Positions 3,488 through 58,071 of a stretch of 64,000 nt of DNA are shown here, piece by piece (positions within the stretch are counted from its first letter, which is position 1; each line of letters begins with the position of its first letter). This DNA is from Tubulanus polymorphus (Eukaryota > Animalia > Nemertea). Location of the stretch: positions 1 through 64,000 of the forward strand of contig NW_027437432.1 in the NCBI RefSeq assembly GCF_964204645.1, in the 5' to 3' direction. Both the position numbers and the translations under genes were made by a program. The notes under the pieces were generated by a model. It was not told where the DNA came from and did not search any database. It saw nothing but the letters and a program-made list of their open reading frames with translations.

Positions 3488-6400
3488 TCAATATCGATCT
3501 TTTCTCATTTTTCTAGTTTTTGTTGCCAGGGGTGACTGGAATTTCTCTAAATAAGGACTCGTTAATTGAGCGTTTAAATTTCCTGAAGCTGAAAACGGAC
3601 GTTTATTTACAGATAGTTTATCTTTCCTCGCGCTGGTGCTGCCACCGGCTCCGCTCCGAGATTTACTACTCTTGATAAATAGTTTTGGCGACCCGCTGTT
3701 GCTCATACCGCTGTGTTTCGGGGATGTTAAACCATCGCGACTGTGACCGTTTATGAATCCGTTGCTAGGCTGCGGATGTAGTGTCGTTATAGCGGGAGTC
3801 GAATGCTCACTAGAGGGCGTATGAATCAGTAAACTCGCAGTTTTCTTACGATATTTTGACATATCTGAAATTATAGGTTTTTAGTTTATAGAATTTCTGG
3901 TGAATTTGAAGCGATCAGATCGAGAGAACTGGACCGATATATTACCGAGGAATTCTGAAGTGATATCAGTACTAGCGCCATCTATATCATCTAAACCATC
4001 TACTTCAGTCATCGTCGTGTAAAGTGTCTGATCGAGAAATGCAGAAAATGACGAATAATCAAAACTGCAGTTACGACCTTGCCATACGAGATTATCTGAA
4101 ATATTTAAAATTAAAGATCAGTCTTAGACCATGGGTTATAGATGATTGTTCATGATATCGCGAGGCAGGTTAATTTATACATTTCACTTACTTTGTGGAT
4201 ACATAATAGTAATGTACGGAACTCCTTGAATCTTTAATTTCTTACTCAAATCCTGATCTTTTCTTCCTTTAGAAGGCGTGCTTTTCGGAGTAGAAGGATC
4301 TTTATTATCTAATCCTACGATTTGACCGGTTGTATGTCTGATTATTACGTCATCTCTCCAACCATTCTTCATTAGAACGTGAATCAATTCCTGACGTTCA
4401 GCGATTATATTACTGTCTAAACCAACGGCAACCGTCAGGAAATTGCACTGAAAATCATTTATTTGAATCCAGTTTCATGAAAACAGAATTGAAATACAAT
4501 GAGTAATAAACAGAAATGTTAACTTACAGTTGTGTATTTCTCTTTAGCGAATTTGAAGAAGTAACTGGCAACTTTCATCGAAGCCAAACACCTGAAATAC
4601 AATCAAATAACACGAATAAATGAGGTTTCACGAAGGCCACTCACTTCCCCTCAGAGAACCGTAGCTCTCCTTCCTCGCACAGGAAACGTTCACTTACCAG
4701 TGAGTCCAGAATAAGATGACTGTTGGTTTATCGGTATTACCAGCAATCATCGGTTTAAATTCTCCATCAAATACATCTCTTAAAGCGCAGGGTGGTGCGG
4801 GTACGGGCTGTGAGAGGGCGCCCTGGTGAATCGGACGGTTTGGCGTGTGCATCTCCATCCTATATGTATCTGGATAGTGACAGCAGCCTTGTGACGGAAA
4901 CCTACAAACATAAACAATATCATTGCAGTCACTGTAGTAAATACTGATGTCATACAGGCATTCAAAATATGAAGAGACCTTAATTTCAACATGAAACATC
5001 AGTTGAATTTGTAGAATATCTCAAATTTTCAAAAAAAAAACTTTTGAGGAAATGAATATTTATAAGTAGAACTTACTTGGATTCTTTATTGTGCATATTA
5101 TTGAGACAGTAGAATGAGAATGGTTGGAATGGATGTGTTAATAATTCGACTATATTTGACTCGACACTGTTTGCGTGTGGTTTATCAGCTATTGCTATCA
5201 TACTCAATCTGTGACTAGGTTCACCTAAATTCAACTACAAAACAAACAATTCATTTATACAACAGTTGCATATTCAGTTATGGTAACAATGCTTAAATCA
5301 AGGAATTCTTTTGAAGAACCTTTGAAAGAAGAAATGTATGTATGACCTGATCGATTGAAATGTTAGTCGTGATCTGCGTGATCCAAGATGGCCACCAGTA
5401 ATTCTACACTTACCTTGATTCTGACAGTTTTGATGCCAGCGTGTAAAGTACAACCATACTGTTTACCATCAACCAGTACTTTATAACCACTGACATTTAT
5501 ATCTGCATTACTCTGAGGACATTGCCAACTGACATGTGCCAACAGGTGACCTGAAAGAACAACAACAAACAGACCTCATACAGTTTGTGAGGGTTTCAGT
5601 TGCTTATTAACCAGCGGACCTAGATAAAGTGATGCTGCACATTTAACTGCTTCAACTTTTGAGGGGAGGGGAGGGGGAACAGGAGGAGGGGTGTCTGTTA
5701 AATGTATAGTTCAATCATTTGAAATGAAGTTATCTCGAGTCAAATGGTATAAACTAAAAACTGTGTATTTTGATTGTCTAATCTACGAACCTGTATAATG
5801 AGCTAATGATGAGAAACAATCCTCTAACATGTCTTCAACAAGCACCAGACTTTCATTTACTTTAGAACCAACCTAAAAAAATATAAAATATTTCATTAAC
5901 CAACGATTTCATTCGATGAGTTCCAAATCAGTCTCAGAAATGTCAAAATTCATTTTACCTCAGAATCGAGTTTCTTCGATGATTTATTTAAAGTCAACAA
6001 TCGATCTCGTTTATTCAATAAATCACACGTGATTTTCTCGATTCGTCTGCGCTCTTCTAAACCGACGACGGTGATAGCAATAACCGGCGGATCCGGACTT
6101 AAAGCCGGTTGGATCGAGATCGACTCCGACCGACTAATTTCACTCGTTCCGTGAACCTAAACAATAACATCGAAAACCAAAATTCAAAATAACTGTCAAA
6201 TGGATCTAAAAATAGTAACTAACATCCAGCCCCCCCCCCCTTGAAGTCTCTCTCAAATAAACTAGAAAATCAATACTTACCAGAACCTCAAGATGCACCC
6301 TGTAAGTTCCTTTCTTTAGATTCTTTAATTCAGCGACTCTAGTTTCAGGATGAATCGGACTAACAGTCTGTACAACTTTATCAGTTCCTTCTTCCGTACA

Positions 6401-9400
6401 ATACAACTAGAAATTATTGATATAACATGAAACCATTTACAAATAGCAAAAACTACCAGGGGAGAGTAACAGTAATAGTTGAGTGATTTTACCTTAAACT
6501 GTTTAATTTTGACACCTCCCGTGCAGTAAGGATCAGTCCAGCGAACTCTTACAGCATTTCCTGTGATACTTTCAGCTTGTGTTAACATCGGTGCTTTTAC
6601 TCCGGGCCACGTGACAAATAACGGTTCTGACGGTTTACTGTGTAGTTTCTCATTAATACATAACGCCTATAAACATAAACACATGTGAAATACATAACAT
6701 CCACTTACACAACATCCACAACTGTGGAACTGTGGAGTCCAGAACTGACAATATATACCTGTATCTGGAATGCGTATTCCATGCACCATTTTCCGTGTGT
6801 AAATGTATAAGTGAGTTGATCAGGTCCGAGCATGGCTTCAACAACTCCATTTACAAACACTTTAAACCCACTAATAACACCCTCACCATACGTATTAATC
6901 TTATCCCATTCAATCGCGATATATTTGAAGTTACAAGCTCTGAAAAAAATATTTGAAAAATTCGATGAATAGCTTAGAGAGGAGAGAAGGGGGAGAGAGG
7001 AAAGAGAGAGGAGAAAGAGAGGAGAAAGAGTAGGTACCTGAGAGATAGAACTGGTGTATCTGGTGGAGCTGAAGTCTGAACTACAATCCGTGATGATTTC
7101 TCTAATACATCTTTATCTTCACCCAAAACGAGTAAATGAATAAAATGATTTGTTCCCGGGAAACAACCATTAATGATGCAATGCTGCTGATTGGATGCAA
7201 CCGTTACTTCTTTTTGCTGAAATAAACATGTCGAAAAATGTATCAGACATTCCACGTGTCAGTTACAACTGAGTCCACAGATCCACGTGTCAGTAACAAC
7301 TGAGTCCACAGATCCACGTGTCAGTTACACAGACTCGGGTAAATCAGACATTGTACAAACCATTGGTTGTGCCATACTGCTCCATTGTACTTTATAACCA
7401 GTAACTCCCTCTGGTGTTATATATCCGGACCAATCGAGATGAATCGAATCATCGGTTGTTTGTATTGATTTTAATGGAATGATGTCGTGATCTTCCTCAG
7501 CAGACGTATATTCTGAGAGATGTAAGCTGCCAGCTTCTGGTAGATAGCTAGCGCCGTCTTGTGTACTGATATATAACGTATTAGACAGTGCCGATTCACT
7601 TCCCGATTCATTTATAGCGATTAGATTCACTTTATAATGTCGATTCGCGCGGCACGGAATCACTGCTTTATGGTGTTTATGAGTCAATGATTTACCAACT
7701 CTTTTATCGTCTAAAAGCAACTGTGGATAAAATAGATTCATACTTAGTTAAAAATCAACAGCAGCCGCAGTGAGAGGGACAGGGTCAGGGTCTGGGGCTG
7801 GGTTAGAGTTAAGGGTTAGGGGAACAGTGATTGTTTCTAACCTGATATCCTTTGATTTTATTTTGTCCATGAATTCGAGGTTCTCCCCAAACAATACTGA
7901 ATTCATCACTTTCAATCGAGCGTAAAAATATCTCCGGAGCAGTGGCGACACCTGGTATCAGTACTTGTAAGTGCGGATAATTCGGCGTGGTCGATTCTTT
8001 TTTATGGATCACTTCTAAACCGAGTTCATAAATGCATCTACAACAAGAACATGTCAAACTCAGACCAATTTCTTAGTGTAAAATCATTCAGTTTAGTTGT
8101 ATCAATATTTTATACCTGTCCTCATTCACAGCTATTGAACATCTATTCACATTAGAATCTAATACTTTACTCTTTACGACTGGTTTCTGTTTATTGTAAT
8201 AATTCACACGGAATTGTTTGATTTTATCGTTTTGTTCGTGTATTTTCCAATCGAAGTAAATTTCACCTCCGCCGGTTTGAGTCGCGGATCTAGGAACAAA
8301 TACAGCACTCATTTCAGAAATACAACCTGAAAATAGAGAGACCAGAAAACTGGGTCAACTGTGAGATAACTAAAAGAAAACTGGGTCAACTGTGAGATAA
8401 CTAAAAGAAAATTGGGTCAACTGTGAGATAACAACAAGAGAACTGGGTCAACTGTGAGATAACAACAAGAGAACTTGGTCAACTGTGAGATAACAACCAG
8501 AGAACTGGGTCAACTGTGAGATAACAACAAGAAAACTAGGTCAACTGTGAGATAACAACCAGAAAACTAGGTCAACTGTGAGATAACAACCAGAAAACTA
8601 GGTCAACTGTGAGATAGATGTTCTGGTGATGTGAATAGCATTCAAATTAACACGATTGTGAAATTGATATTAATGAATAAATCTCTCTTACCGGGATAAA
8701 GTTCAGGTATCGACACTGACACAGATTCAGACATCGATTCATCATTTTCTATTTGTTCATCTCCAGAAAGACTGACGAAACTGGTGCGAGAAATAGAGTC
8801 ATCTGTACCGGAACTAATTACAGCATCTTCACCATTCATCTGTTTATAAATATTACAATTAGAAGCACATCACCCTATGACATCACTATATCAACCTATG
8901 ACATCACAACTGACCTTTCTCTTGCGATCTTTCTTCACCTCATCGACGCACGTTACAGCTGTTAATACAATACTGTATGTTTTACCTCCTCTACATTTAG
9001 TGAGAGTACACGTCTGAGCGAGAGGTGATAAACATCGGTGGAATTTACCGTTAATAATCAGTTTATAACCCTGTAACGAACGTTGTAGTAACCGTGGTGA
9101 CCCGTCACACCGATATTTACCGATTACAGAGTATAAAACTGGTTTATTCCACGCAAGTTGTATCGTATTCTGCGTGTAACCACGGATACCGATTACGGGC
9201 TGTTCGCACGGAGCTCGCGTACGTATAAACAACGAACTCGAAACGACGTGAGTCGTCCGTCTGTTCATCATTTCAGTCGTCGTCGACGACGATGAGTCCA
9301 TTGTTGTTTTAACGCTAACGATCGCCTCGACGACGATTTTATACCGAATTCCGGGCAGTAAATTAACGATCGATATCGTATTATCACCGGGATTTAGATT

Positions 9401-12400
9401 CATGTGATCGGCTGTATTTAATTCATCTTGTTTACGAGGATATAACGGAGCCTCGGACCACCGGACGATCTGACCTAATAAACGATTCGATCCATAAACG
9501 GTCGGTGGTTTCCAACGGATAACGATACAATCAGTATGTATTTGATCGGCTGATAGGTTATAGGGCGCGTCCGTTCCCGAGGTTAGAGCAATAACGGTAG
9601 CCTGCGGCAACCAACGATTGTCTTTCGGGATTAAACTGAAATCTTGCGGTAATTTCTGAAGTCGTTTCGTCTCGTCGCGATCGGGAAGTTCGTAAAAGAA
9701 TTCTTCGGTTACCGTGGTGATCGTAACAATGTGTTCTACGCGTTCTCCGAGATTCTCGATCGTACAACTCGTCGCGTCCGGCAACAGATCTAACGTTACT
9801 ATCTCAGGATTTGTCGCCATAGGAACGCAATCAACTCTCAAACCTACAAATAACAATCAAATCAGTTATCTATTTTCAAACTGAGCAGTTTGAGAACTGA
9901 AGAGTTTTAAACTGATTTATACCGATGACTTCAACTCCGTGCTCTTTAGGTGGATCCCAGGCTAGTTGAATACTGTGACACGTTGTAGCTGTGACTCCGA
10001 TATTTTTAGGTGGATGCGGAGGCCTAGCCGTGTGAATATTCAATTTATTTGATTTTCCAGTTAGAATTAACGTGTTATTTCCGTTCTCAACGAGGTTCCC
10101 ATCAACATCTACAACAATACAATCACACGAGTTTACTGTAATGTTTGATATTTTAGATGGATTATAGAAATGAATTGTAGAGTGATTACGGTAATCTGTC
10201 TACCTTCATCATAAGCCGAATAAGATCTGGTGCTTCTTCCTTCTATGATCACCGTATAAGTTGTGTCCGATTTTAGATCATCTAACAACAAGTGATCCTC
10301 TAAAAACAATGAGAGAGATTGAGAAAATCAAGGAGCTGCAACAATAAGGAGGAGATGGAAGGAATGTTAGAACAAACCTGATGTAATCTGACTGTTAATA
10401 TCTAATTCGGGTTGGTCCCCTGGCCACCATGTGACTTCATAACTCTCAGGAGCTACGAAGTGAGCCTGCGGTTTGTTAGCTATAAATAAACACATCTCAG
10501 CGAGATTAGACAATTATTGAAATAATAATAGAATTGATTGAGACAACAATGTGAATCACAGTGAGTACTTACATGTATTCCAGACAATGAATGCTGAATG
10601 ACCGGTAACTGTTTCACACCACACTTTAGACGGTGGTTGTACTAACCCTGTGTAGTGAACTGACAGTTTAGGTCCTGCCTTACAAGCTGTATACTGATCA
10701 TGTTTAATATTATCTGTAAAAACATCGATGAAATAATCTTAAAATATCTGAAAATATGGAGTATCATTCATCAGTTTACAGAGAGATTGTTGCTATGGAG
10801 CCAAATTTAGAGTGAAAGAAAGTTTGCTAAGTTTAGTAGTGTTCAGTATTAGAACACGCAGTTCCACAGTTCATCGTTGATATTTGACTGTATAGAGTTT
10901 AAACATCGAACATTAACTGTTTCTAACTAAACCGAGAATTGTAGAAGAATTAACACTAATCAATGCCTGGTTTATAAGTTTACCCCAGTCATCTCCGTTC
11001 TCTAATTTCTCATTGCCCTGACCGACTGGATGTTCCGTCAATGCTATCAGTTGTAAAACGACTTTATCACCGAGTTCAACATCTTTAATAGTGAAATTCT
11101 GTACATCGGGAGGAACCACTGAACCATACAATTTACCATTCTTTAATATCTGATAACCCTGAAAATATACAATTTAAAATCCATCCAGATTTAGTGAACA
11201 CAACACGTTGAATATTTCCAGTTTCCAGGGCCTTCAAATTCCCTGATTTGTTCTCGAGGTTTTTCCTCGTCAAACAGACACCTCTCTAGTGATCTATACT
11301 AGGAGGGTACTCTACAATCACGAGATACTCACAGATACTCTAGCGTCTCCGTATTGCTGCGGTGTTTGCCACGTGAGATGAATGCCCTCAGTATCGAGAC
11401 CCTCAATTCGTAAGTTTGGAGATTGCGGTGGTGCTGAACTGACAACAGTGATTACATTAGACAATTGACTCTCAGATACACAATAAACGTGATCAGTTTT
11501 ATTATCGGTCTTCGAGTAACCTGCATACGCCTGGAAAATACAAAAACACTAAACCATCAATAATATTTCTAAAACAAACTCTTCGGCCTAGAGTCAGAAA
11601 TGGTTGAATTCAGGGAAGATTTGAGAAATATTTGACCTTCACTGAGACTTCGTAAGCTTGTCCCGGGATAAGATCGGTCAGATAATACTGATAACCATTC
11701 TTATCAGCCGTATTAACAGATTTCATTTCACCGTGCCATTTCCCATCTACAAATATCCTACAAATAGAAAACGCAATCCCGGTCAGACAAGCTTTATCTC
11801 CTCTACCCGTCGTAGAGCTACAGCCGAGCATTCGGCAATTTTGAAGGTCTTTTGAAATATCTCATAGCAAATAAAATTAACAATTTTATAATAGGCCACA
11901 GATATATTCTTGTGTTCCTAGAATAAGATGTTTCATCGATATTTCTGAAACACTGGATGAAGTACTCACTTGTAGTAAGAGACATCCTCTAATCGGGGAA
12001 TACCTCCCGCTGTCGGTTTATCCCAACCAATCACAACCACTCCTTTTTTAAACGAAGGTTGTTGACAGATGAATGTCGGGGGTGGAACGTTCGGACATGT
12101 TACTTGTATAGTTTTAGACGGTAGACTATTCCCTACTGCGTGATCAGTAGTAGCTATCACTTGAATGTTTTTCGTGGTTCCTAAAATATCAAAATATTCA
12201 GAAATCATTCGAAATTCATCAATTCTAAAATATTGAAGGGAAAGATGGATTAAACACCGAGAGTTACATAAATAATCATATACAACAAGAGTAGATGATG
12301 ATAAACTGACCTGGTTGAAGACTATCAATAACAGTTCTAGTAACTTTAGGATTCAGTTTCTCACCAAGTTGTTGACCATCGACCATTATCATAAAACCAG

Positions 12401-15400
12401 ATATATCCATACCATCGATAGCTTCATAACCATCCCACTCTAAACACACCTGAACATAGAGACACATAGCTATAAACCACCTCATTCCATAGGCAGAATC
12501 CCATTCCATAGGCAGAATCCCATTCCATAGGCAGAATCCCATTCCATAGACAGAATCCCATTCCATAGGCAGGGTTAATTGCTCAAATACTCTTATGGCA
12601 GACTGGCAATTAAAGGAGGAAGGGAAAACAAAAGCTAACTGAAGAATTTCAAGGCAATTTCTTCGCAAAAAATCATTGGAAGTCTGTTAAACTAGTCAAA
12701 CCAGGGAGGGGCCCAGGGTCAAGTTTTATATATAACATATGGCTTTACCAAGTCCACATCTTTTAACCTAGAAGCTTTATAGAAAGGCTGAAATAAATCA
12801 ATGGTTGATAACAGATTGGTTTGTAACGTACCTGATAAAGATCAGCTTTATAAACTTTAACATGAGGAGAATCTGGAGCACCTAATGCTGTATAATATAT
12901 CACAGATGAAGACACTTGTATTTCACCGGGCTGCCGAGCATCAACCATTGAATAATTCGCAATTACAAATATCCTACAATATACAAATCATTTACGTACT
13001 GGTTTTTTAATTAGTACATTTTATGATGGTACAATACCGCGTTTAATGCTATATTTACCTGTATTTTTGAGATGGTACGATACCATGTACGACGCATTCA
13101 TTCTTATCAGCAATATTCCATGAATGTTGAATTGCTCTCGACATTTTACCATCAAATTCCTGATCACATTCAAAACTATAAAATAAAACACCAAGAAATT
13201 CGTATCAAATCAGCTCCTCATTGTTCGTCAAATCAGCTCCTCATTGTTTGTCAAATCAGCTCCTCATTGTTTGTCAAATCAGCTCCTCATTGTTTGTCAA
13301 ATCAGCTCCTGTTTGTTTGTCTTGATTTGCAGTTTTAGGTTCAGATTCACAACCAAAATTATGCAGTTAAAATACTTTGTAAAAATGGGTTGCTCTCGAT
13401 AAATGGGCCCCTCCCTCAGTTGTTTTGGCGGCTACAAATTCTATATGTGAGTGAAGAAACTAAGTTCAGCCTACCTGATATCACTGTTAACTTTCTTCTC
13501 AAATTTCTGTCCAATCACATTCACTACGTACAACATGAGTTTGTATGGTTTTAGCGGAGGATGTGGTAAACTCCATTCTATTACTATAGAATTCAACGCT
13601 TCTGGTTCCACTGTTACCGACGGCGACGGTAAATTATCAGCCTATACAAACACAACAATGATACAGTCAATAAAATACAATTAACAATGAGAGATGATTA
13701 GTGATTGCAATTCAATGTACCTCCATTGCTGTTCCAACTGCAGCTGATTTATCTTTCTTAGCATCAGTGGGAACAATTATAGCTTCCTCAACCTCAACTG
13801 CCGCAGCAGCCTCCTGTTGATTTAAACTCAAATCAGCAGTTTCTTCAACATTCACTACAGCATCACCTGCAAAACATTCACAACATTCTTATAAATCTAT
13901 ATCTCATAGAAATATATCAGTTTGAATTGTCTTTTTTTACCATAAATTAAAGAATTGAAGCTTTGTTCTAATATTTTTATTATTCAGTGAAGTTCAGTCC
14001 AAAGAATAGATTTTTGATAGAATTGGATCTTTAAAAAATATTCTTTTTATTATTTTCATCTTTATCAAGTGTAGATTTTTCACTTAAAAAAGAAATGTTT
14101 TATTTCTGTCATTGGAAAGTTCAAGATTCTTAAGTAAAGTGATGTTTATACAATAAATAAAATCAGCTGATTTCATCATGCATTCCAAATATAATCTGAA
14201 ATAAAATCAGTTATTTTCAAATCTTAAAAATAGTTTTTTTTATTGTGAATGATTCAAACGAACAGTTGTGTTTGGTGCAGGAAAATAATCACTTCAAATA
14301 TAGTAATTCTAGGTTCCTGATTGGTCTAGTTTGCTTATCATTATGCAAATAAACAATGATATAGCTGACTAACCCTAGGGTTAAAATGGAATAATCCTAA
14401 GGCCAAACTAGCTACTAACCCTAGGGTTAGAATAGACTGGCCCAAGGCCAAACCTAGGGTTTCAATGGTTTACTAACCCTAACCCTAGGTTCTGATTGGT
14501 CTAGAGTCAGGCCACACCTAGGGTTCCATAGCTATCAACCCATGGGTTAAAATGGAATAACCCTAATAACCCTAGGGTTAGGGTTGCTATCTTACCCTGG
14601 AGTTGCTAAAATGGAACAACCCTAGGTTTGTGATTGGTCTAGAGCTGGTCACCTGATACAAACCTAGCTTCAGAGTAAAGTGACAGATTGTTGTGATGTG
14701 ATTACATGCAGCATAAGAGGATGTATTACTGTAATATTCAACATGAAAATGTTTTTGGTTCGTTTTGTGACACGAAAACTTTGTGAAAGAATGAACGCAA
14801 TGTTTGTAACCCAATGATTTAGGGTTTGGACTGGAGTGGGTTAAAATGTAAAATCATGTTGAATTAAACAGAACAAAAGATACATATAAATGGTTTATCA
14901 CAATGGGAATCATTTTCAAATCATCAAGTGAATATAAAAGCATTGATTTCTGTTGATTTTCTGTAATAAAAATAAAATAACTTATCCATGCCTGATTCAT
15001 GCCTGCAGGTGTAGGTGTCGCCACCGTGCAGGTGTAGTGACAATTAATAAATTCTCAACCTTTTCTCTGTTTTTGTCGTTGTTTGACTTTTTCTCGTTCC
15101 AATTTATATAAAATCTTTCCCAGATCTTTTTTCTTTTTTGGTTTTCGCTGAGGGGTATCTAGGTCGCTGATATCGCCGATAGAAATGATCTCGTCGTCCC
15201 CAGCGATACTCTTCGTTTTAACTACATTGTTAACCTGTGATTTACGATGTAAATAGTCGACAGCCATCCGAGCCCCGGCGACTGTTTTTAGTTTATTCAT
15301 CCACGGACCTTTAGTCGCATCAATCTCTAAAACATCGCAACCATTTTCTGATTCATCGCTAATAGAGGGCGCTGCTATCTGCTGGTTTACGCTACCCGCA

Positions 15401-18400: not shown

Positions 18401-21400
18401 ATCCGTTCTCAACTCAATATCCGGCAGGTCAATATTCTCTGTATCTAATGGCAACGATAGTTCCAACTGATTGGACAGTTTCGGTCGTAAACTTAAATCT
18501 GTAAATAATATATGAAATTATATAAATAAGTGATTAGACTGCGTTGAACTGGGATTGAGAGAGAATGTATTCTTACTATCACCAGCTGGTATAGCCATTA
18601 CTGCTACTCTATACACTATATCCAACTGACATCCTTCTATTACTACTTTACATCTCTGACAATCTTCATCGGGTACAACCTACAATCATTCAATATACAA
18701 CCTACAATCATTCAATATACAATATCTACAATCATTCAATATACAATATGTTGATAAAGATTTAAGTTAGCGAATGGTTTCATTGTTTAAAAGATTCAAA
18801 CATGTCATCGGACGCCAGTTTCTGAGAAGTTGGTTGAACAATTAAAAATATATATCTGATTGTTTAAACTTCAAATTTTGAGCAACTGGACTCAGCTCAG
18901 GTGGATTAGAAGTAACTGGACTCAGCTCAGGTGGATTAGACCATTACGTACCATTCCTCCACATTGTTTTCCGTTGAGATATACTTTATAACCGGCTACT
19001 GGATATTCAGGAGTAGAGATAGACATCCAGATAATAGCCATAGCGTTATCATTATCAGTGATGCCTAGTGATATTAATGGACCTCCAAGAGCTGTTGTCT
19101 TATCACAATGCATTGTCTGAAATATTCAAATATCAGTTCATTTCCCAAGAATCCAATTTACCGAAGAACTATGGAACTGTGGAAATTATCCTGGACTCAG
19201 TTCTACTGTTGTGAGTTGAAGTTTGAACTCTTGAGACACCTTCAATTCTTTAACACAAGTAAATAAGATTTATACTCAGAACTGCGGAACTGGATCCTAA
19301 GGGATGATTTAGGTTCGATATTTTGTGCACAGAGTTGACTGGGAAACTGAAAACTTACCAAATGATTAGATTTATGCGGTAGAAACATTTCTTCTTCGGG
19401 GAAAACTTCCAACCAGATATCGTATGTACGTCCACCAGCGAGACCTGCGATATTTAAACTGTGGTGATTGTGAGGAAATATCTCACAATATGAGATTCCA
19501 TTTAGATATATCTGAAATATCAAATTAGACAAATGTGAAATGATTGACAATGAGAAGATTGAGAATTCGTTACGTTTAAACAGCCCTTCAGTTTACCTCA
19601 TAACCTTTGATCAGATGCAAACTTTCTTGAGGAGGTGGGTCCCAGAAAACTTCTAAAATTCCAGGTCCGGTGAAACAGCCTTTTATTTTCGGGATACAGC
19701 CCCACCATTGCCAGGTTTTTGTCTGCAATAAACGTATTAAGTAAATGAAATACCTGCGGCAAGCGAGGATTTATAGTTACTCATCTTTCAATCAACTTTT
19801 CTCTTGATGTTTATGAAAACTTACAGTAGTTTCTGCTGTATCCAATTCATCGTTTACCGGTTCGGTATCAGACGCCTCTGATTCACCTGATTCTTCATCT
19901 GATATTTTACTCAACACCCAAAAACGTCTGCAAAAATACACATAATCACAATCAATTCATCTGCATTTGAAAATGGAGTCTAAATTGTGAACAAAAACCA
20001 GCACATCAATCCAGCTCTGACTCCATAGAGTTAAACATTTCAAAATTTGGACCTGTTTCGGGTAAAGGAACTAATTGACAAACCTGGAAGTCATGACATC
20101 GCTTTGTAAACAGGAATCACTCACAGCTAAAGCTCTGATTACAAATAAACCACTTTCCTTCAATACAATTCCTTTATCAGGTTTATAAATCTAGAAAACA
20201 ATAAAATAAAATCAGTTTCTCTGAAAGACGATGAATAGAAATATCAGAAATGAATGATTGAAAGACCTTTGATTGTTGTCTATGAGGTTCAGGTAAAGAT
20301 CCGTCTAACGTGTAGAATATCTTAGCGTCCACAGTTTGACAGGTCAGTTTAACGACGTGTCCTCGATCACAGACTCCACCGATCTTATCAGAGCAAATAT
20401 CAGGACAATCGGTCTTTTTACCTAAAATTGATGAGAAATACCTGAGAATCCTTTATGAGAAACAAAACCACGTCAGGATTTAAACATATGAACCCTGAAT
20501 TGATGAGAGACCAGTGAAAGACTGATGCATTAAACCACTCGGGCCCTGTACCACTCGGGACACTGTACCACTCCGGCACTGTACTACTCGGGACGCTGTA
20601 CCACTCGGGCACTGTACTACTCGGGACGCTGTACCACTCGGGCACTGTACCACTCGCACACTGTACCACTCGGGCACTGTACTACTCGGGACGCTGTACC
20701 ACTCGGGCACTGTACTACTCGGGACACTGTACCACTTGGGACGCTGTACCACTCGGGCACTGTACCACTTGGGACGCTGTACCACCAGAAATTCTTACCT
20801 TCTAACAGAACCTGTACAGTTCCAGCGAAACCCGGAGCACCTTGAGACGCGACACAGAATTCTCCAACTTCATCAAACGTATAGAGGAAGCTGTTATTAG
20901 GAACCGGTCGTCCGCTGTTGAATGATTTACTGCCTTGTATTACACTGAGTGGAGTCTACAAATATACATACATCATATATACATGTACATCAGCTAAATA
21001 CATTATACATGTGCACAACAGATGTATATAGGCGATACATACCTCACTACTAGGAGGGTTCACATGTACTATATTGTGTTCCTCTTCTCCGTTGTTTTTC
21101 CAAGTCCACAAAACCGACTGACCCTAAAACCACGAACCCAATAACTGTTAGTTTATCATTAAAAAGTGTACAGCAATTCAAACAACTCCTTCATGAATGG
21201 TTTATATATTAAACAACATTTCATCAAATAATCATCGTGATGTGGTAGCTACTGATAGCTGTTCTTGGCTGCCACTCTCTTCAGCTACCCTTCCTTAGAC
21301 TCCTTTCCTCTGACTCCCTTTCCCTGGCAGCTTCCCCTCCTTGGTCTCCCCTCTCCCTGGTTTCCCTTCTCCCTGACTCCTACCCCCCTGAGCTAGGTTA

Positions 21401-24400
21401 CAAACAAACATACCTTTAGAATGTTGACTTTAGTCGGATTGAATCCTTTAGTTGAGACCTGAACCGCAATACAATCATTACCTTCATCTACTATAACAGT
21501 ACTGATCTTAGAATCATTATACTGAGACTGAAATATTATAAATAAAACAATTTATCAATCATAAAGTAACAATGAGAATGGAGAGAGGAGAGAGAGGAGA
21601 GAGAGGAGAGAGAGGAGAGAGAGGAGAGAGAGGAGAGAGGAGAGAGGAGAGTGGAGAGACACAAACCTGATCTTTCTTGCCCGGTTTAATAAATGCTTTG
21701 CTACAGAAATGATAAATTCCACTGTTTGCAAATGAGCGATTCATACAGCGACTAAAATACAAACAGATTTATATTGATTATACGACTAACGCTTGGTTCC
21801 TGTTTCACATCCATTCACAGAGAATTTCGTATTCTAGCAAAGAACCACAGTCAGAAGAAACAGTAGCTATATAGAATCATTCTTTGAATAGTCTGATACA
21901 ATCTCGACATTTTAGGATTAAATCTAAAATCTCAAAGCGTTTCTGAAATATGTTTGTTCCAATCACAGTTTAGTGAGACTTACCGCGGAGCGTGAGTACC
22001 GGGCATCGACGATATATTCAACAATTGATCAACTGATTCTATTTGTTGAACGTCGTTTTGTTTCAAACCTTTAAACGACCAACAGACGACATCGTTAGTG
22101 TTTATAATTAGGGGATCTGGATTTAACGAGGTTGAATTAACAGCGATGTTGTGAACTCTCGGCTGAGATGAGACGACTATAGCACCGAATACCTTCGCTA
22201 TATTAGCACTGAAATATATATGTAACATGTGAGACACTGGGCCATGTTTGTACATTACTGGGGTCGGTCCGAAGTGTAGTTTGAGGTCCTATTACGAGTG
22301 ACAAAAATTGTCAAATTGCCCTTTTTGGATTTTACAGCCCCAGAATCATTGAACTATAGATAGAGGTTTCTATGTTTACCTGATATAATAGTAAACACCA
22401 GGTGAAGTGAACTGATTGACGTAAGCAGACGGACAATCCATCGCAGCTCCGCTACAGAATCCATCTTTAACGTGAAAACCTTGATGAGACACCTATGATA
22501 TAATAATATAACTACTGGTTATACAAACACCGAGTCCTCACAACTGAGCAGGTCCTCACAGCTGCGCAGGTCCTCACAACTGATCAGGTCCTCACAGCTC
22601 AGCAGGTCCTCACAGCTCAGCAGGTCCTCACAACTCAACTGGTCCTCACAGCTCAACTGGTTTATAGATATTTTAGAGCATTTTATAGAGCATTTTTCTC
22701 AGTATTTTTACCTGGATAATGTTGTGTTGTTTTGCGCTAGTTTGCCAAACCCACCAAACTCTATCATTACTGTGCACACTGAGAACCTTCGGTTCAAATC
22801 CTTTATCCGTCACATGAACCGTGTAATTCTACAAATATACAACAAATATATAGTCACTTCATCCGATGAGAACATAGATAAACTATTAGGAGGAAGATGG
22901 ATAGATAGACAGACAGATAGACAGGTAGATAAACTACTAGGGGGAAGATGGATAGATAGACAGACAGATAGACAGGTAGATAAACTACTAGGAGGAAGAT
23001 GGATAGATAGACAGACAGATAGACAGGTAGATAAACTACTAGGAGGAAGATGGATAGATAGACAGACAGATAGACAGGTAGATAAACTACTAGGAGGAAG
23101 ATGGATAGATAGACAGACAGATAGACAGGTAGATAAACTACTAGGGGGAAGATGGATAGATAATACTTACCCTTGATCCAGGATTGACTACGACTGATGA
23201 AGTAGAAATGTTATTAGGACTATCAGCTATTCTATAGTGATATAATCCAACTGCGTTTAAACTCGTAGATTCAAATCCGACTAAAGACTTTGTCAAAGCC
23301 GAGGATTCATCTAGAAATTCACATTTATCTGAAAAATATGATTGCAAAGTGATAGTTATATACAGAGGGAGGGAAAGAGGGGTGACGTAAGAGCCGCTCC
23401 TCGGAATGAAACGATGACTTTTGAGTCTATTAGAACATTAAGTATCTCTTTTATGGTCCTGCTTTACCCTGCTAGGTAGCAGTCCATCGAGGTCCCTAAT
23501 TCTATCATGTTACTCATCACAAAATTATGATTTAATGATGAAACAGTAGGACTTACTTTTACAATCGAAAGGTAGAGCCTCTTTAGCGATAGGAGATAGA
23601 CTCCGTTCAACTTCAACGAGCGAGAATGTAGTTTTATTATCTAATAAACTGTTAGTTTTCCAGCTCCACCAAACCTGATCGCCGGTCTCCACGTACTGTA
23701 AGTCTGTTATTATACAGAGATTCAGTGTTCAGTTTATAAATAAACGAAATAAAGAATACAAATCCGACAATTAATGAAATATCTGGTGTAAAATAAGCAG
23801 ATAATTCATCAATTGTATGATTAATAATTTGTCTAAATTGAATATTTTGAAAACGTTAAAACTGGGTGTGAAATATTGAGACACGAACCTGGTGCGAATC
23901 CTTCTGGAGAAAGTTCAATGAAATGTTGTTTTTGTTTTGGACGTACGATGATCGTCCCCAGATATTCAGCAGCTTCATGGAAACTATGATCGGAGTAATA
24001 ATATACTCCAGGAGTTTTAAACTCATGAGACACTAGTCCACATTTACTCGGTTGAGGCCATTTAAAACCATCTTTCTTTTGCTGTAAATATATCAAACAG
24101 AAACATTCAAAACTGGATCTCAGTTTTACATTTGATGACATTTAAAATTAGTTCAATTTGAACATTTCCCAGTTCAACAGTTCTTACTTAGAATTGACAA
24201 CTTAATGGATTAAAACATTAAACTAATCTTAACTCATATTTCACTGACAAATGTAGAACTGGAAATGTGTGACTCACTTTAAATGATTCATCTGGATTGT
24301 GGTTGAGATTTGGAGCCTCAGTTTGATAAATACAATGATGTTTTTTGACGTTATTTTTATCCCACGACCACCAGACGCGATCTCCTTCCTCAATCAATAA

Positions 24401-27400
24401 TATCATCGGTTTAAATGTTCGATCTTCAACTTCTATTCGATGCTCCCTAAAAATAAACAGATTCTTCATGATGTCAACCAGTTCAATATGAAACAAACAG
24501 ATTCTTCACAATGTCGACCAGTTCAATATAAAACAAACAGATTCTTCACAATGTTGACCAGTTCAATATAAGACAAACAGATTCTTCACAATGTCGACCA
24601 GTTCAATATAAGACTAACAGATTCTTCACAATGTCGACCAGTTCAATATAAGACAAACAGATTCTTCACAATGTCGACCAGTTCAATAAACGACTCCTGT
24701 GTTAAAACTTACTTTTGTGAAGCTCTAACTCGAACTATTGTAAGATGTTTTTTATCAATAGTTCCAGCTTCAGCTTGGAAATAATAGATACCAGGATTTC
24801 TAGAAAACAGTAAAAATAGAAAATTAATCAGTCTCACAAATTACAGTCATCCAAAATAAACCAAACTGGAAACTAATAAAGAGCACATCTTACCTGAATT
24901 CATGTTTGTAAACACCAGAAGAAGTTGCTATCCCGGTTCTAAAAATAAATCATTTCATCATCAATGCGGTTCAGTCAGATGGTAACAATTAACACTAGTA
25001 AATGTAGATAGACGAACAGCTAGAATATAATTGATATTTTACCCTGATGTATTTTCTGGTTTGATAATTCCACAGTGTTTTGAGCAATATTTCACTTCAT
25101 ACATGAGATGTTGTATTTCACATAGTTTCCATTGCCATTTCACAATCGTTCCTTGATCAATGTGTAAAACTGGATTAGTAAATCCTGCGTCCGTTAATTC
25201 AGCTGTTAATTCTTTCCTTTCTTGAACGACGACGATCAGAGGGGTACAGCGTAGTCCGGCACTAGAATTATACACATAAAAACAATGACGATCAGAGGGG
25301 TACGGCGTAGTCCGGCACTAGAATTATACACATAAAAACATTGACGATCAGAGGGGTACGGCGTAGTCCGGCACTAGAATTACATATACCAGTTTAAAGA
25401 GAGCCAAGTATACCCCGTTCTACAAGAGTTGGATTTAACTATCTTTAACTGTTTGAAATATCAATAAGTGTTAAACCTGATGTTCAGAGTTAAATATTAA
25501 AGATATAACCGTTAAAATGAGTTGATAATTTGACAGTAGAGGTAAAATATCGGAAATAAACTTAACAACTTATATTCTAGAATTAAACAAACAACAACTG
25601 CGGAACTGGATCCTGGATTCTTCAGTCAAGAGACATGTTTTTTACCTGACAAATTTATATTCTCCGGCTAAATTGAACTGATGTTCATAATGACCTTCTT
25701 TAGTTAACGGTCCGCTGTAAATACCGCCGGTAACCGGTCGAAACTGGTCTCCATCATGCACTACCTACAAATACAAATACAAATCAAAACTATCAACGTA
25801 TAAACAAGAGTAATGGATCTGATATTTCTGGGCGCAGTTTCTACGGGTAAATCCTCAATCTAGTTATAACCATGGTTATAACTGACAAATTTCAAACCGT
25901 TCCCAGGGACTATCTGTCTTCCATATCTATGAAACCGAGCCCTGATGTTTAATGGTTACATATTGATTTCTTAACGACAAAAACAAGAAAATCATTTATT
26001 TCGCTACAAAAGAAATCAATTTTCTACTAAAGGTAAAATCTGCATTATTTATTGAACTGTTCCGTTAAACAGGTCGATCACGATCAAGAAAATAATAGTT
26101 CCTTAGTAACTGCTCAACTGGTCTCATCTGTTATGGTAACCAGTGACAGCGCGATTATTAAAATGACCTTCACAGCATTAATTAATGACCTTCACAGATA
26201 TAAGATCCAGATCAACAATAATTTACTGAATATATTCTAAAATCATCAATAAACTAGTATCTCGTCAGAGTTTGTATCGGCACTAGATGACTCGTAGAGT
26301 ATAGTAGTAGCTTTATTGATAAAATCATTTGATTCTAGATTTCTAGATAGGTTGGCGCCTAAAGGGAGTGTAATATTAGCAACTGTTGAGTTAGTGAGAT
26401 TGGATGGGGACTGATGGGGGTAGATACTGTACAGTGTGATGTCACCGACTTCAAACAAACAGCACAAAAAAAAATATCAGCCGATATATTACTATCAGAT
26501 CAGCGTAACCCATGGCAACAGAGAATATAAACGGAGTGATGAATCTATTTATAGACACAGATTCACTGACAAGGAGTGGGAAGGGGAGAGGAGTGGGGAG
26601 AGGGAGTTAGTAGAGAGGGGTAGGGAGAGGGAGTGGAGAAAATGGGGAAGTGGAATGTGTCTAAGAACCCCAGTGTGGTCTAGATTTACACCAGACCCCG
26701 ACACACTCAGACCCCAGTGTGGTCTAGATTTACACCAGACCCCGACACACTCAGACCACAGTGTGGTCTAGGTTTACACCAGACTCCGACACACTCAGAC
26801 CCCAGTGTGGTCTAGGTTTACACCAGACCCCGACACACTCAGACCACAGCGTGGTCTAGGTTTACACCAGACCCCGACACACTCAGACCACAGCGTGGTC
26901 TAGGTTTACACCAGACCCCGACACACTCAGACCCCAGTGTGGTCTAGGTTTACACCAGACCCCGACACACTCAGACCACAGCGTGGTCTAGGTTTACACC
27001 AGACCCCGACACACTCAGACCCCAGTGTGGTCTAGGTTTACACCAGACCCCGACACACTCAGACCACAGTGTGGTCTAGGTTTACACCAGACCCCGACAC
27101 ACTCAGACCACAGTGTGGTCTAGGTTTACACCAGACCCCGACACACTCAGACCACAGCGTGGTCTAGGTTTATGGTAAGTTTCACATGGATTGTGCTGAT
27201 CTCTATTACCGGTATAATATTATATGATCAGATTAAAATGTGTTGTGTATTTTACTAAGAGGATTAGAGAAACTCAAACAGAAATCAATCACACGTTTCT
27301 ACTGCTTTCTACTGAATTTAATCCTCCTTCACTGGCAATTCAGCTGCTGATGATGGGAGAGACTGGGGTACTGATGAAATTCAGCTGCTGATGCTGGCGC

Positions 27401-29001
27401 TGGTGATGTTGGGAGAGACTGGGGTACTGATGAAATTCAGCTGCTGATGCTGGTGCTGGTGATGTTGGGAGAGACTGGGGTACTGATGAAATTCAGCTGC
27501 TGATGCTGGTGCTGGTGATGTTGGGAGAGACTGGGGTACTGATGAAATTCAGCTGCTGATGCTGGTGCTGGTGATGTTGGGAGAGACTGGGGTACTGATG
27601 AAATTCAGCTGCTGATGCTGGTGCTGGTGATGTTGGGAGAGACTGGGGTACTGATGAAATTCAGCTGCTGATGCTGGTGCTGGTGATGTTGGGAGAGACT
27701 GGGGTACTGATGAAATTCAGCTGCTGATGCTGGTGCTGCTGATGATGGGAGAGACTGGGGTACTGATGAAATTCAGCTGCTGATGCTGGTGCTGGTGATG
27801 TTGGGAGAGACTGGGGTACTGATGAAATTCAGCTGCTGATGCTGGTGCTGGTGATGTTGGGAGAGACTGGGGTACTGATGAAATTCAGCTGCTGATGCTG
27901 GTGCTGGTGATGTTGGGAGAGACTGGGGTACTGATGAAATTCAGCTGCTGATGCTGGTGCTGGTGATGTTGGGAGAGACTGGGGTACTGATGAAATTCAG
28001 CTGCTGATGCTGGTGCTGGTGATGTTGGGAGAGACTGGGGTACTGATGAAATTCAGCTGCTGATGCTGGTACTGTGATAAAACTGACAGCTAATGAAGAC
28101 TGACAAGATCCGGCTAATCACTACTTATAAAACACACATTGACAACGTGTAAGTGCAGTGAAACTAACCACCCTGTGGGGGGGGGGGGACTGACGGGACT
28201 GAAGTGGTTCACAGAGAGAGAGAGTGGCTGTGTCCTCCACTTCATATTGATATTTACAGTGGAAATTGCTCACTATCCACCTCTATACAAACTACATGTA
28301 CTGGGTGAGAAGGTGTCGTCATTAGTAACTAATCATAATTTTACTGAATTGTTGAGAAGAGAAGTTCATCATTAGTAATTAATCATAATTTAGTTTTCAC
28401 TTCACCCGTGGGACAGGGTAGGATACTAACACGCAATGGAACAAGTCTCATGATGGATGGATGGATGATCGACATAGTGTTATCCATATAACCCTCAAAT
28501 CGTGTTACCTTGTATAATCCTCAAAGTGTTACCCCTATAACCCTCAAATAGTGTTACCTGTATAACGTTATAACCATTTCCAACCGGATCATCCCAGGCA
28601 AATGTTAAAACCTGTCCCTCTGATAGTGTTACCGCTTGTAATGAAAATCCACTGCGAGATATCACTACAATATTCAACGGTCCTGAAATATAAAATATAA
28701 TTCCTCCAATGACATCATCGCAATGGTTGGTTCTAAAGTAGATCGGGTTTAACTCATTCAGGTTCTTACCTTTCCGTTCATTGTTTAGAGCTGAAACTTT
28801 TTTCCATGTTTTTTGACTGGCAGCTGACCGGGCGGATAAAACAGGTCGACTGGTCGCAGGTCGACTGGTCGCGGGTCGACTGGTCGTTGTGTTACTAGTC
28901 GATTGTTGAACTAGTTTAGGAGATTGACGAGTGGATGATGAAACGACTGATCCGTTACCGGACGGATCCACATCACCTTCAACTGAAGCTCCCGTTCCCA
29001 T
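3488..29001 (-). CDS. Giant uncharacterised multidomain protein: myristoylation motif, 7 cupredoxin-like repeats, Fn3-associated domain, about 16 FN3, TlpA-like thioredoxin (CxxS), basic tail; more than 50 exons
   Basis: Chain of short minus-strand exons with GT-AG junctions from ATG at 29001 (MGTGAS) to TGA at 3488. Phases were checked for the N-terminal half and the C-terminal exons, and only partly across the FN3 array. Continuity across 13.9-16.5 kb is inferred from phase, so two isoforms or two genes are possible. Confidence 0.75.
3946..4800 (-). other. Exons encoding a TlpA/redoxin-like thioredoxin-fold domain with WCLAS (CxxS)
   Basis: Spliced: PVPAPPCALRDVFDGEFKPMIAGNTDKPTVILFWTH-W|CLASMK...LSKKLKIQGVPYITIMYPQN-NLVWQG. 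This matches the TlpA layout PAPxFxLxDxDG...KPVVLxFWAxWCxxC...GVPxxxxIDxxGxIVW. Confidence 0.75.
5160..13641 (-). other. Exons encoding about 14 fibronectin type III repeats (2 more at about 18577-19722)
   Basis: Repeated PxxP...IxLxW..P...GYxVxxNG...LxPGxxYxVxVxA patterns, e.g. in ORFs 8891-9856, 7325-7741 and 11610-11831. Confidence 0.85.
8340..8615. repeat. About 31-bp intronic minisatellite next to an acceptor
   Basis: About 9 copies of agaaaactgggtcaactgtgagataac plus a short variable tail. Confidence 0.9.
14310..14670. promoter_or_regulatory. Module of palindromic TAACCCTAGGGTTA, inverted CCAAT boxes and an octamer
   Basis: Multiple taaccctagggtta, three tgattggtctag and one atgcaaat. 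A related module lies in reverse orientation at 32690-32980. Regulatory function is inferred. Confidence 0.4.
16580..17460. repeat. 31-bp intronic minisatellite, about 28 copies
   Basis: Unit acagtgtactctggtctcatagatacagtgt. Confidence 0.95.
20084..20421 (-). other. Exons encoding an Fn3-associated/CHB_HEX_C-like domain
   Basis: VKLTCQTVDAKIFYTLDGSLP...IYKPDKGIVLKESGLFVIRALAVSDSCLQSDV carries the I(Y/F)YTLDGSxP and (I/V)(R/K)AxAV hallmarks of this family. Confidence 0.8.
20536..20785. repeat. 15/18-bp composite intronic minisatellite
   Basis: Variants of ctgtaccactcgggca / ctgtactactcgggacg. Confidence 0.9.
22875..23162. repeat. 51-bp intronic minisatellite beside a donor
   Basis: About 5.5 copies of tagataaactactaggaggaagatggatagatagacagacagatagacagg. 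Confidence 0.9.
24455..24690. repeat. About 40-bp intronic minisatellite abutting an acceptor
   Basis: About 6 copies of aaacagattcttcacaatgtcgaccagttcaatataagac. Confidence 0.9.
25231..25382. repeat. 56-bp triplication spanning a splice acceptor and exon start
   Basis: gacgatcagaggggtac(a/g)gcgtagtccggcactagaatta... at 25231, 25287 and 25343. Confidence 0.9.
26505..26519. promoter_or_regulatory. Second RFX X-box in the long intron after coding exon 2
   Basis: GTAACC-CAT-GGCAAC. Further partial matches are gttccttagtaac (26098-26110) and gttatggtaac (about 26130). Confidence 0.5.
26668..27172. repeat. About 44-bp hairpin-containing minisatellite
   Basis: Unit cagtgtggtctaggtttacaccagaccccgacacactcagac(c/a)..., about 11 copies. 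Confidence 0.95.
27337..28072. repeat. 56-bp minisatellite, about 13 copies
   Basis: Unit gaaattcagctgctgatgctggtgctggtgatgttgggagagactggggtactgat; not a multiple of 3. Confidence 0.95.
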
Positions 29002-29186: not shown

Positions 29187-29201
29187 GTTGCCCTCGGCAA
29201 C
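29187..29201. promoter_or_regulatory. RFX X-box about 190 bp upstream of the giant gene ATG
   Basis: GTTGCC-CTC-GGCAAC fits the consensus GTNRCC(N0-3)RGYAAC. Confidence 0.6.
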
Positions 29202-57296: not shown

Positions 57297-58071
57297 AAGA
57301 GAAGAAGAACTGAGTGGTGTGTTAAATCTGAAAATCGACAAGAAAAGGGTTAGGGTTGTATGTGTAATTTCTGAGATATATTTGTTGGAGATTAATTGAA
57401 TAAACTTCACGACACTGAATATGACTTTATTCAATTTGGTTTAAAAAAAATAAATTTCATGAGTTCTAACTGAATCAAGTTTTCGAATTTTATAAGATTA
57501 TGGGGTCGTTGGTGCATTGTAAACATCCTCGCTTGCCAGGGTTTGATTGGAGCCCGCTGTAGTCAGAAACTCGTAAACACTCGGGGTTAATGAATTTTTA
57601 ATGAATCGCTTTCTTTTTTAGTAAAATATAATAGATATGTTTAGCTGTGTGAGTGAGAACATTAAAACTAGTTTAAAGTGTGAGTGACTGCGGAGAACTT
57701 GATAATGAAAAAAACAGTCTTACAAATATCGCCATCACCAGGAGAATAGCAACTATAATGTGTTATATCGAAATCAATAGAGTTTTATGTCCATAGAATT
57801 GGCAACATAGACACAAACACCTCGCTACTGTATAAATTACAGACTGAATCGCTGCGCTGTGAAGACGTCGAGCTAAACACACGTCGAGAGAGAGAGAAAA
57901 TTATAGGCATCGCACATATATAGCTGCGCCAAATGATGATTACAGACTTCAAAACTGTGAACAATAATAAATGGGTATGAACTGCACGAGTGCGCGCATC
58001 ACTCACATCAGTGGAGTCGACTGCTTCGTGACGCCGTGATTCTTACAGTTTTGCGCATTACACCAAAAACA

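What the first reader, a model, noticed from the sequence alone, without database searches (positions are those of the whole stretch)
3488..29001. Giant cupredoxin x7 - Fn3-associated - FN3 x~16 - thioredoxin protein: candidate undescribed membrane-tethered ciliary scaffold
Seen: one minus-strand exon chain with no signal peptide or evident TM segment. It starts MGTGAS and carries 7 cupredoxin-like repeats, an IFYTLDGSLP domain, about 16 FN3 repeats, a short helical insert, a TlpA-like domain and a Ser/Lys/Arg-rich tail. Established: MGxxxS is the N-myristoylation consensus, and the IYYTLDGSxP domain occurs in the ciliary protein DZANK1. I know of no characterised protein with this combination. 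Inference: a protein of several thousand residues forming a beaded filament, lipid-anchored at one end with a thiol domain at the other, possibly linking ciliary membrane and cytoskeleton.
Basis: partly seen in the sequence, partly recalled or inferred. Interest (0 to 1): 0.85.

Follow-up and report, generated by a model that had tools for sequence, protein, structure and literature searches.

The report
Unstudied giant myristoylated FN3 scaffold protein
A ribbon worm gene encodes a 3,700-residue protein that has kept the same unusual layout from sea anemones to acorn worms and that I found in no paper; it probably anchors to the inside of a membrane and braces the cytoskeleton, perhaps in ciliated cells, but that location is unproven.

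Summary
Confirmed and refined. The window (Tubulanus polymorphus, a nemertean) holds one 59-exon, all GT-AG, stop-free gene of 3,694 aa. Collinear 3,000-4,000-aa orthologues, all 'uncharacterized', occur in molluscs, annelids, Lineus, echinoderms, hemichordates, Intoshia and Nematostella; five of six loci checked share 40-49 of its 58 introns. Layout: conserved MGxxxS; seven cupredoxin folds that all lack the copper-binding cysteine and pack with a DZANK1-like domain into a compact head (AlphaFold pTM 0.83, Lineus orthologue); two FN3; a 565-aa acidic spacer; fourteen FN3; a TlpA-fold domain with CxxS instead of CxxC; a basic tail with a conserved RP[YF]SA motif. No signal peptide or TM segment. 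Best reading: an N-myristoylated cytoplasmic membrane-to-cytoskeleton scaffold (about 0.75). A ciliary setting is about even odds: a rare palindromic RFX X-box lies 200 nt upstream (423 in 268 Mb; near-matches in Lineus and Capitella), but I obtained no expression data and found no chordate, sponge or protist orthologue. No earlier scan note covers it.

The parts
29187..29201 (.). Palindromic RFX X-box (GTTGCC N3 GGCAAC), 200 nt upstream of the ATG
   Evidence: 423 sites of this class in 267.8 Mb against 94 for the reversed pattern
3488..29001 (-). Whole gene: 59 coding exons, 11,085 nt, 3,694 aa, single copy
   Evidence: own-genome searches hit only this locus
28770..29001 (-). Exon 1: MGTGAS N-myristoylation consensus and a 77-aa Ser/Thr/Arg-rich extension; followed by an 87-nt in-frame intron (28769-28683)
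   Evidence: sequence
20799..28682 (-). Exons 2-17: seven cupredoxin-fold repeats; residue at the copper-cysteine position is S, A, D, I, S, S, S
19825..20421 (-). Exons 18-20: Fn3_assoc / CHB_HEX_C_1 domain (IFYTLDGSLP), nearest PDB sequence DZANK1
   Evidence: Pfam above cut-off
18331..19722 (-). Exons 21-25: FN3 repeats 1-2 and a conserved linker
13721..18070 (-). Exons 26-29: about 565-aa acidic low-complexity spacer (20% D+E); not conserved in sequence; exon bounds rest on splice signals and phase only
   Evidence: the spacer is 19-710 aa in orthologues
5077..13641 (-). Exons 30-54: FN3 repeats 3-16
5791..6070 (-). Two-helix hairpin inserted after the first strand of FN3 repeat 16 (approximate bounds)
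   Evidence: model helices 34-59 and 72-98; FN3 aligned across them
3946..4901 (-). Exons 55-58: TlpA/ResA-type thioredoxin fold, FWTHWCLAS (CxxS, split by the intron at 4697-4592) and the cis-Pro motif GVP
3488..3864 (-). Exon 59: Ser/Lys/Arg-rich tail with the conserved KLSVNKRPFSA motif; stop

Best explanation
A single ancient eumetazoan gene for a cytoplasmic, N-myristoylated structural linker, most likely working in ciliated cells. Shown: layout, folds, conservation, no signal peptide or TM segment, loss of the copper cysteine, CxxS motif. Inferred: the myristate holds the N-terminus on a membrane; the seven copper-less cupredoxin domains and the DZANK1-like domain form a compact protein-binding head beside it; the acidic spacer gives slack; the 14 FN3 domains form a spacer rod (about 50 nm if extended, at roughly 3.5 nm per FN3; my estimate); the FN3-hairpin-thioredoxin block is a docking unit whose single cysteine could form mixed disulfides or be redox-modified but cannot run a CxxC cycle; the basic tail with its RP[YF]SA motif binds an acidic polymer such as tubulin. 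The cell type (motile or sensory ciliated cells under RFX control) is the least certain step. About 0.75 for a membrane-tethered scaffold, about 0.45 for that scaffold acting at cilia or basal bodies.
For: Full-length collinear orthologues; shared introns 45/58 Lineus, 40 Capitella, 49 Lottia, 46 Glandiceps, 41 Nematostella; tree of named rows follows animal groups; MGxxxS conserved; no Cys at the copper site in any repeat column except 3 of 33 rows in repeat 6; C 27/29, S 28/29, cis-Pro 29/29; tail net charge +5 to +18 and RPx[ST] 73 against 5.7 shuffled; perfect X-box at -200, one-mismatch boxes at -274 (Lineus) and -21 (Capitella), none within one mismatch upstream of 19 housekeeping genes; DZANK1 is a transition-zone doublet MAP (10.64898/2026.06.11.731632); UNC119 carries myristoylated proteins into cilia (PMC9266639 abstract); kept by ciliated Intoshia and meiofaunal Dimorphilus.
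Against: No expression, proteome or localisation data. No orthologue named from chordates, sponges or ciliated protists, so it is not a core axonemal part. X-box absent near the ATG in Lottia and Nematostella and 2-3 kb away in Glandiceps and Dimorphilus; only 1 of 5 known ciliary genes here showed a perfect box; PMC2375033 warns that a degenerate box in one species is not predictive. Myristoylation and FN3 arrays are not cilium-specific; best FN3 hits in PDB are titin, with RIM-BP weaker. Folds were predicted for the Lineus orthologue from 32-33 sequences.
Confidence: 0.45

Rival explanations
1. The same membrane-tethered FN3 scaffold, but at neuronal or secretory release sites or the muscle cell cortex, working like RIM-binding protein or a titin-type linker.
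For: Pfam Ig_RIMBP2 scores E 1e-11 to 1e-16 over whole orthologues; titin is the best PDB sequence hit and RIM-BP appears at E 0.008; range (cnidarians and bilaterians, no sponge or protist found) matches nerve and muscle as well as cilia; RFX also controls non-ciliary genes (own knowledge).
Against: No SH3, Ig or kinase domain; hits are generic FN3 similarity; apparent absence from arthropods, nematodes and vertebrates, which keep synapses and muscle.
Confidence: 0.27
2. A sperm or spermatid-specific structural protein (flagellar base, manchette-like or annulus-like), that is a germ-line version of the ciliary reading.
For: X-box, and RFX2 is a main regulator of spermiogenesis (PMC4498915 title and abstract); basic tail; all named species have flagellate sperm (own knowledge).
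Against: No expression data; kept in lineages with very different sperm; not found in vertebrates.
Confidence: 0.12
3. A metal or redox sensor or chaperone: the cupredoxin repeats bind a non-blue metal and the CxxS domain passes or senses it, as TlpA does for Sco and cytochrome oxidase.
For: The first copper histidine is kept in repeats 2, 3, 5 and 7 (26, 33, 29, 31 of 33); repeat 3 has invariant His plus invariant Asp at the cysteine position; Cys-less cupredoxin folds such as EfeO score Z 10.5; bacterial cupredoxin + AhpC-TSA and FN3 + thioredoxin fusions exist.
Against: Cys, second His and Met ligands are missing in all repeats; the His may be structural; no CxxC; two thirds of the chain is spacer.
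Confidence: 0.11
4. Two adjacent genes or a mis-joined model, split in the acidic region.
For: Exons 26-29 have no sequence or intron-position support; no reads; some databases hold halves (Lingula, Macrostomum, Solemya); Clytia has the head twice with no FN3.
Against: About 30 single-chain models across five phyla, including RefSeq models with several isoforms; spacer always present; all splice phases fit without a stop.
Confidence: 0.05

Closest known systems
Uncharacterised orthologue family (Lineus LOC135491376, Owenia, Capitella CAPTEDRAFT_219540, Aplysia LOC101845075, Crassostrea LOC105321045, Strongylocentrotus LOC577931, Ptychodera XP_070557721, Nematostella LOC116611762, Intoshia OAF69324)
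   Same: Whole layout, 29-55% identity, 40-49 of 58 introns in five of six loci checked
   Different: Only spacer length; none has a name or function, and the eleven identifiers searched occur in no held paper
DZANK1
   Same: One Fn3_assoc domain with YTxDGSxP, E 2.9e-6; intracellular
   Different: DZANK1 has zinc ribbons and ankyrin repeats, 752 aa; no cupredoxin, FN3 array or thioredoxin
Titin/twitchin, MyBP-C and RIM-binding proteins (intracellular FN3 scaffolds)
   Same: Cytoplasmic FN3 arrays used as spacers and binding platforms
   Different: No Ig, kinase or SH3 domains here; lipid anchor, cupredoxin head and thioredoxin end are not found there
Type-1 blue copper proteins (amicyanin, plastocyanin) and multi-cupredoxin proteins (ceruloplasmin, factors V and VIII)
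   Same: Fold: Z 14.1, rmsd 1.3 A over 87 residues to a Nitrosopumilus cupredoxin; first His often kept
   Different: No Cys/His/Met ligands; cytoplasmic; seven-domain packing unlike any solved chain (TM-score by query at most 0.13)
TlpA/ResA/DsbE thioredoxin-fold oxidoreductases; CxxS monothiol folds
   Same: Fold Z 15.0, rmsd 2.5 A over 140 residues; WC and cis-Pro in place
   Different: CxxS instead of CxxC; fused at the end of a 3,700-aa chain; Cys lost in Dimorphilus and Intoshia

Membership tests
Type-1 copper cupredoxin | Cupredoxin beta-sandwich fold | tested here: met
   (model of the Lineus orthologue)
Type-1 copper cupredoxin | His, Cys, His, Met ligands | tested here: not met
   Cys column holds S/T/D/V/S/S/S in 33 rows; only the first His is kept, in four repeats
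TlpA/ResA disulfide oxidoreductase | Thioredoxin fold with N-terminal hairpin and cis-Pro | tested here: met
TlpA/ResA disulfide oxidoreductase | CxxC active site | tested here: not met
   CxxS in the window and nearly all orthologues
N-myristoylated proteins | Gly2 with Ser at position 6, conserved | tested here: met
   24 of 35 models start MGxxxS, 7 more carry it internally
N-myristoylated proteins | Myristate actually attached | not testable with these tools
   needs mass spectrometry or labelling
DZANK1 family | Fn3_assoc domain | tested here: met
DZANK1 family | Double zinc ribbons and ankyrin repeats | tested here: not met
   no such Pfam hit in three full-length orthologues
Titin/twitchin or RIM-BP | Ig plus kinase domains, or SH3 domains, around the FN3 array | tested here: not met
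RFX-regulated ciliary genes | Strict X-box near the start, conserved across species | tested here: inconclusive
   perfect here; one mismatch and near in 2 of 6 orthologues, far in 2, absent in 2
RFX-regulated ciliary genes | Expression in ciliated cells or presence in a cilia proteome | tested here: inconclusive
Core motile-cilium proteins | Orthologues in vertebrates and flagellate protists | tested here: inconclusive
   none named; the word-index searches missed known orthologues and several metagenomic clades are unnamed

The most novel reading that the evidence does not exclude
An undescribed, roughly 600-million-year-old membrane-to-microtubule linker of invertebrate ciliated cells, lost in ecdysozoans and possibly chordates, whose head is a new cytoplasmic assembly of seven copper-less cupredoxin domains and whose far end carries a redox-sensitive CxxS domain.
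Probability: 0.4. Interest if true: 0.78.

Novelty: new variant of a known kind. Interest (0 to 1): 0.6.

Why it matters
Very large, single-copy, unnamed proteins conserved from cnidarians to hemichordates are rare, and this one can be tested in Nematostella, sea urchin, oyster or Platynereis. Cupredoxin folds are normally extracellular, periplasmic or lumenal (own knowledge); seven copper-less ones packed into a cytoplasmic head is an unusual reuse with no solved counterpart. If ciliary, it would be a large part that fly, worm, mouse and alga studies could not have found, and a candidate for unassigned linker densities in invertebrate cilia.

Tried and rejected
Following the operators' note, the joined model was sent to no search or fold tool: searches used single exons by reference or fetched orthologues, and both AlphaFold jobs used the Lineus orthologue. 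Cilia-proteome tables of Sigg et al. were not held; single-cell supplements lacked the identifiers or were not held. Rejected: an apparent hydrophobic segment near residue 100 (intron read-through); blue-copper function; CxxC oxidoreductase; homology between head and C-terminal block; Pfam noise hits Ntox46 and DpdA; Foldseek hits to central-apparatus chains (generic beta-sandwich repeats, TM-score about 0.1); Atlas hits (bacterial or diatom look-alikes only).
Full report
Source. The assembly has 267.8 Mb in 77 contigs. Its contig 1 is 32,063,560 bases, the length given for the contig of a Tubulanus polymorphus twitchin, and that protein matches the genome at 88-98% per exon. The window is therefore almost certainly from this nemertean. 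The closest orthologue found is from another nemertean, Lineus longissimus (55% identity).

Gene model. I read the minus strand and fixed exon ends on AG/GT signals. The result has 59 exons, 11,085 nt and 3,694 aa, with consistent phases and no internal stop. One correction came late: the first ORF contains an 87-nt in-frame intron with strong splice sites (28769-28683); removing it removes the only hydrophobic stretch and gives an N-terminal extension as long as that of Lineus. The gene is single copy.

One protein, widely conserved. phmmer with the largest exon against 1.84 billion representatives gave 127 hits. Full-length ones align along the whole chain in order and come from Ptychodera, Anneissia, Bulinus, Intoshia, Lingula, Saccoglossus and Dimorphilus. 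A search with the Ptychodera head added about 30 proteins of 3.2-4.0 kaa from molluscs, annelids, Lineus, echinoderms and hemichordates. Nematostella has a 3,805-aa orthologue and Macrostomum has head fragments. Intron positions are shared at 45, 40, 49, 46 and 41 of 58 sites with Lineus, Capitella, Lottia, Glandiceps and Nematostella, and 12 with intron-poor Dimorphilus. A quick tree (the careful search did not finish) groups named rows by phylum. Only exons 26-29, the acidic spacer, lack outside support. No arthropod, nematode, chordate, sponge or protist orthologue was named. That is not proof of absence: the word-index search missed known orthologues, and several metagenomic clades are unnamed.

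Anatomy. MGxxxS opens 24 of 35 models and a like motif lies inside 7 with longer 5' ends, while the residues after it are not conserved. There is no signal peptide or TM segment. The head of the Lineus orthologue (831 aa) folds at pLDDT 87 and pTM 0.83, which suggests that the seven repeats and the Fn3_assoc domain pack as one block; I did not see the PAE. Repeats are cupredoxin folds (amicyanin E 0.002; Z 14.1), but nothing solved matches the whole (TM-score at most 0.13). Aligned on amicyanin His53 and Cys92, the His is kept in repeats 2, 3, 5 and 7 and the Cys is replaced in all seven, so these are not blue-copper sites; repeat 3 has an invariant His and Asp. The Fn3_assoc domain passes the Pfam cut-off and its best PDB hit is DZANK1. 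Sixteen FN3 follow, two before and fourteen after the spacer. The C-terminal 431 aa fold at pTM 0.80: the last FN3 carries a two-helix hairpin and abuts a TlpA/ResA fold with WCxxS and cis-Pro. The tail is basic and holds a conserved K[IL]S[VI]NxRP[YF]SA-type motif; RPx[ST] occurs 73 times against 5.7 in shuffles.

Cilia question. A perfect palindromic X-box lies 200 nt upstream of the ATG and fits the least degenerate consensus used in PMC2375033. The genome has 423 such sites, 4.5 times the reversed control; even if all sat at promoters, that is about 2% of an assumed 20,000 genes. One-mismatch boxes lie at -274 in Lineus and -21 in Capitella (background 2-15% per 560 nt); Dimorphilus and Glandiceps have boxes 2-3 kb away; Lottia and Nematostella have none. 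None of 19 housekeeping loci had one, but only one of five ciliary controls had a perfect box, so the control is weak. DZANK1 is a transition-zone doublet protein (10.64898/2026.06.11.731632) and UNC119 delivers myristoylated cargo to cilia (PMC9266639), but both features occur outside cilia.

Mechanism. Most likely a myristate-anchored linker: compact binding head at the membrane, slack acidic spacer, FN3 rod, docking block with one reactive cysteine, and a basic tail for an acidic polymer. The parts are shown; their roles are inferred. I give 0.75 to a membrane-tethered scaffold and 0.45 to its acting at somatic cilia or basal bodies, against 0.27 for a neuronal or muscle cortex role, 0.12 for a sperm-only role, 0.11 for metal or redox sensing as main job and 0.05 for two genes.

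Novelty. Every domain is known and the orthologues sit in databases as 'uncharacterized', but eleven of their identifiers and the domain combination return no paper in the held library, which lacks most subscription journals. It works like an intracellular FN3 scaffold yet fails membership of titin, RIM-BP, DZANK1, blue-copper and TlpA families. Verdict: real, conserved, undescribed architecture; new variant of a known kind; interest 0.6. The scan's earlier notes held nothing on it.

Noticed in passing
P0163 (Clytia hemisphaerica, 2,312 aa): Holds the seven-cupredoxin + Fn3_assoc head twice in tandem, then an acidic tail, with no FN3 or thioredoxin: the head can stand alone and duplicate.
   Followed up: partly
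P0013 and P0160; L012, L017: Dimorphilus has two copies close together (DgyrCDS1941, DgyrCDS1945); L012 shows two convergent copies beside a GFO_IDH_MocA gene, the same neighbour as in L017. Both have lost many introns; P0160 has lost the thioredoxin Cys.
   Followed up: partly
L016:688-1965, L017:1706-2386: An SH2-domain gene lies divergently upstream in Capitella and Dimorphilus; no such ORF was obvious upstream in the window.
   Followed up: no
window:704-1650 (minus): Downstream gene looks like TRABD (weak TraB Pfam hit) with a 15-nt PGPEK coding repeat; the contig starts with a 32-nt repeat derived from its exon end.
   Followed up: partly
window:40688-46800, 53875-54093, 58036-59118: Neighbours: probable TENT4-type poly(A) polymerase (by reading only), a VAP-like MSP-domain gene and an intronless rhodopsin-family GPCR.
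   Followed up: partly
window:16583-17477, 20534-20785, 22875-23162, 24450-24688, 25231-25382, 26667-27172, 27343-28078: Many introns hold their own minisatellite, several copying the adjoining splice region; the 56-nt unit at 25231-25382 repeats the acceptor and start of exon 4, leaving decoy acceptors.
   Followed up: no
orthologue isoforms P0148, P0150, P0156, P0157, P0158, P0162: Several mollusc models have long N-terminal extensions ahead of the MG motif; if real, these isoforms would not be myristoylated.
   Followed up: no
P0009, P0021, P0030 and kin; L011, L014: Intron-poor, divergent orthologues in metagenome contigs form unnamed clades, probably small invertebrates; hosts not identified.
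   Followed up: partly
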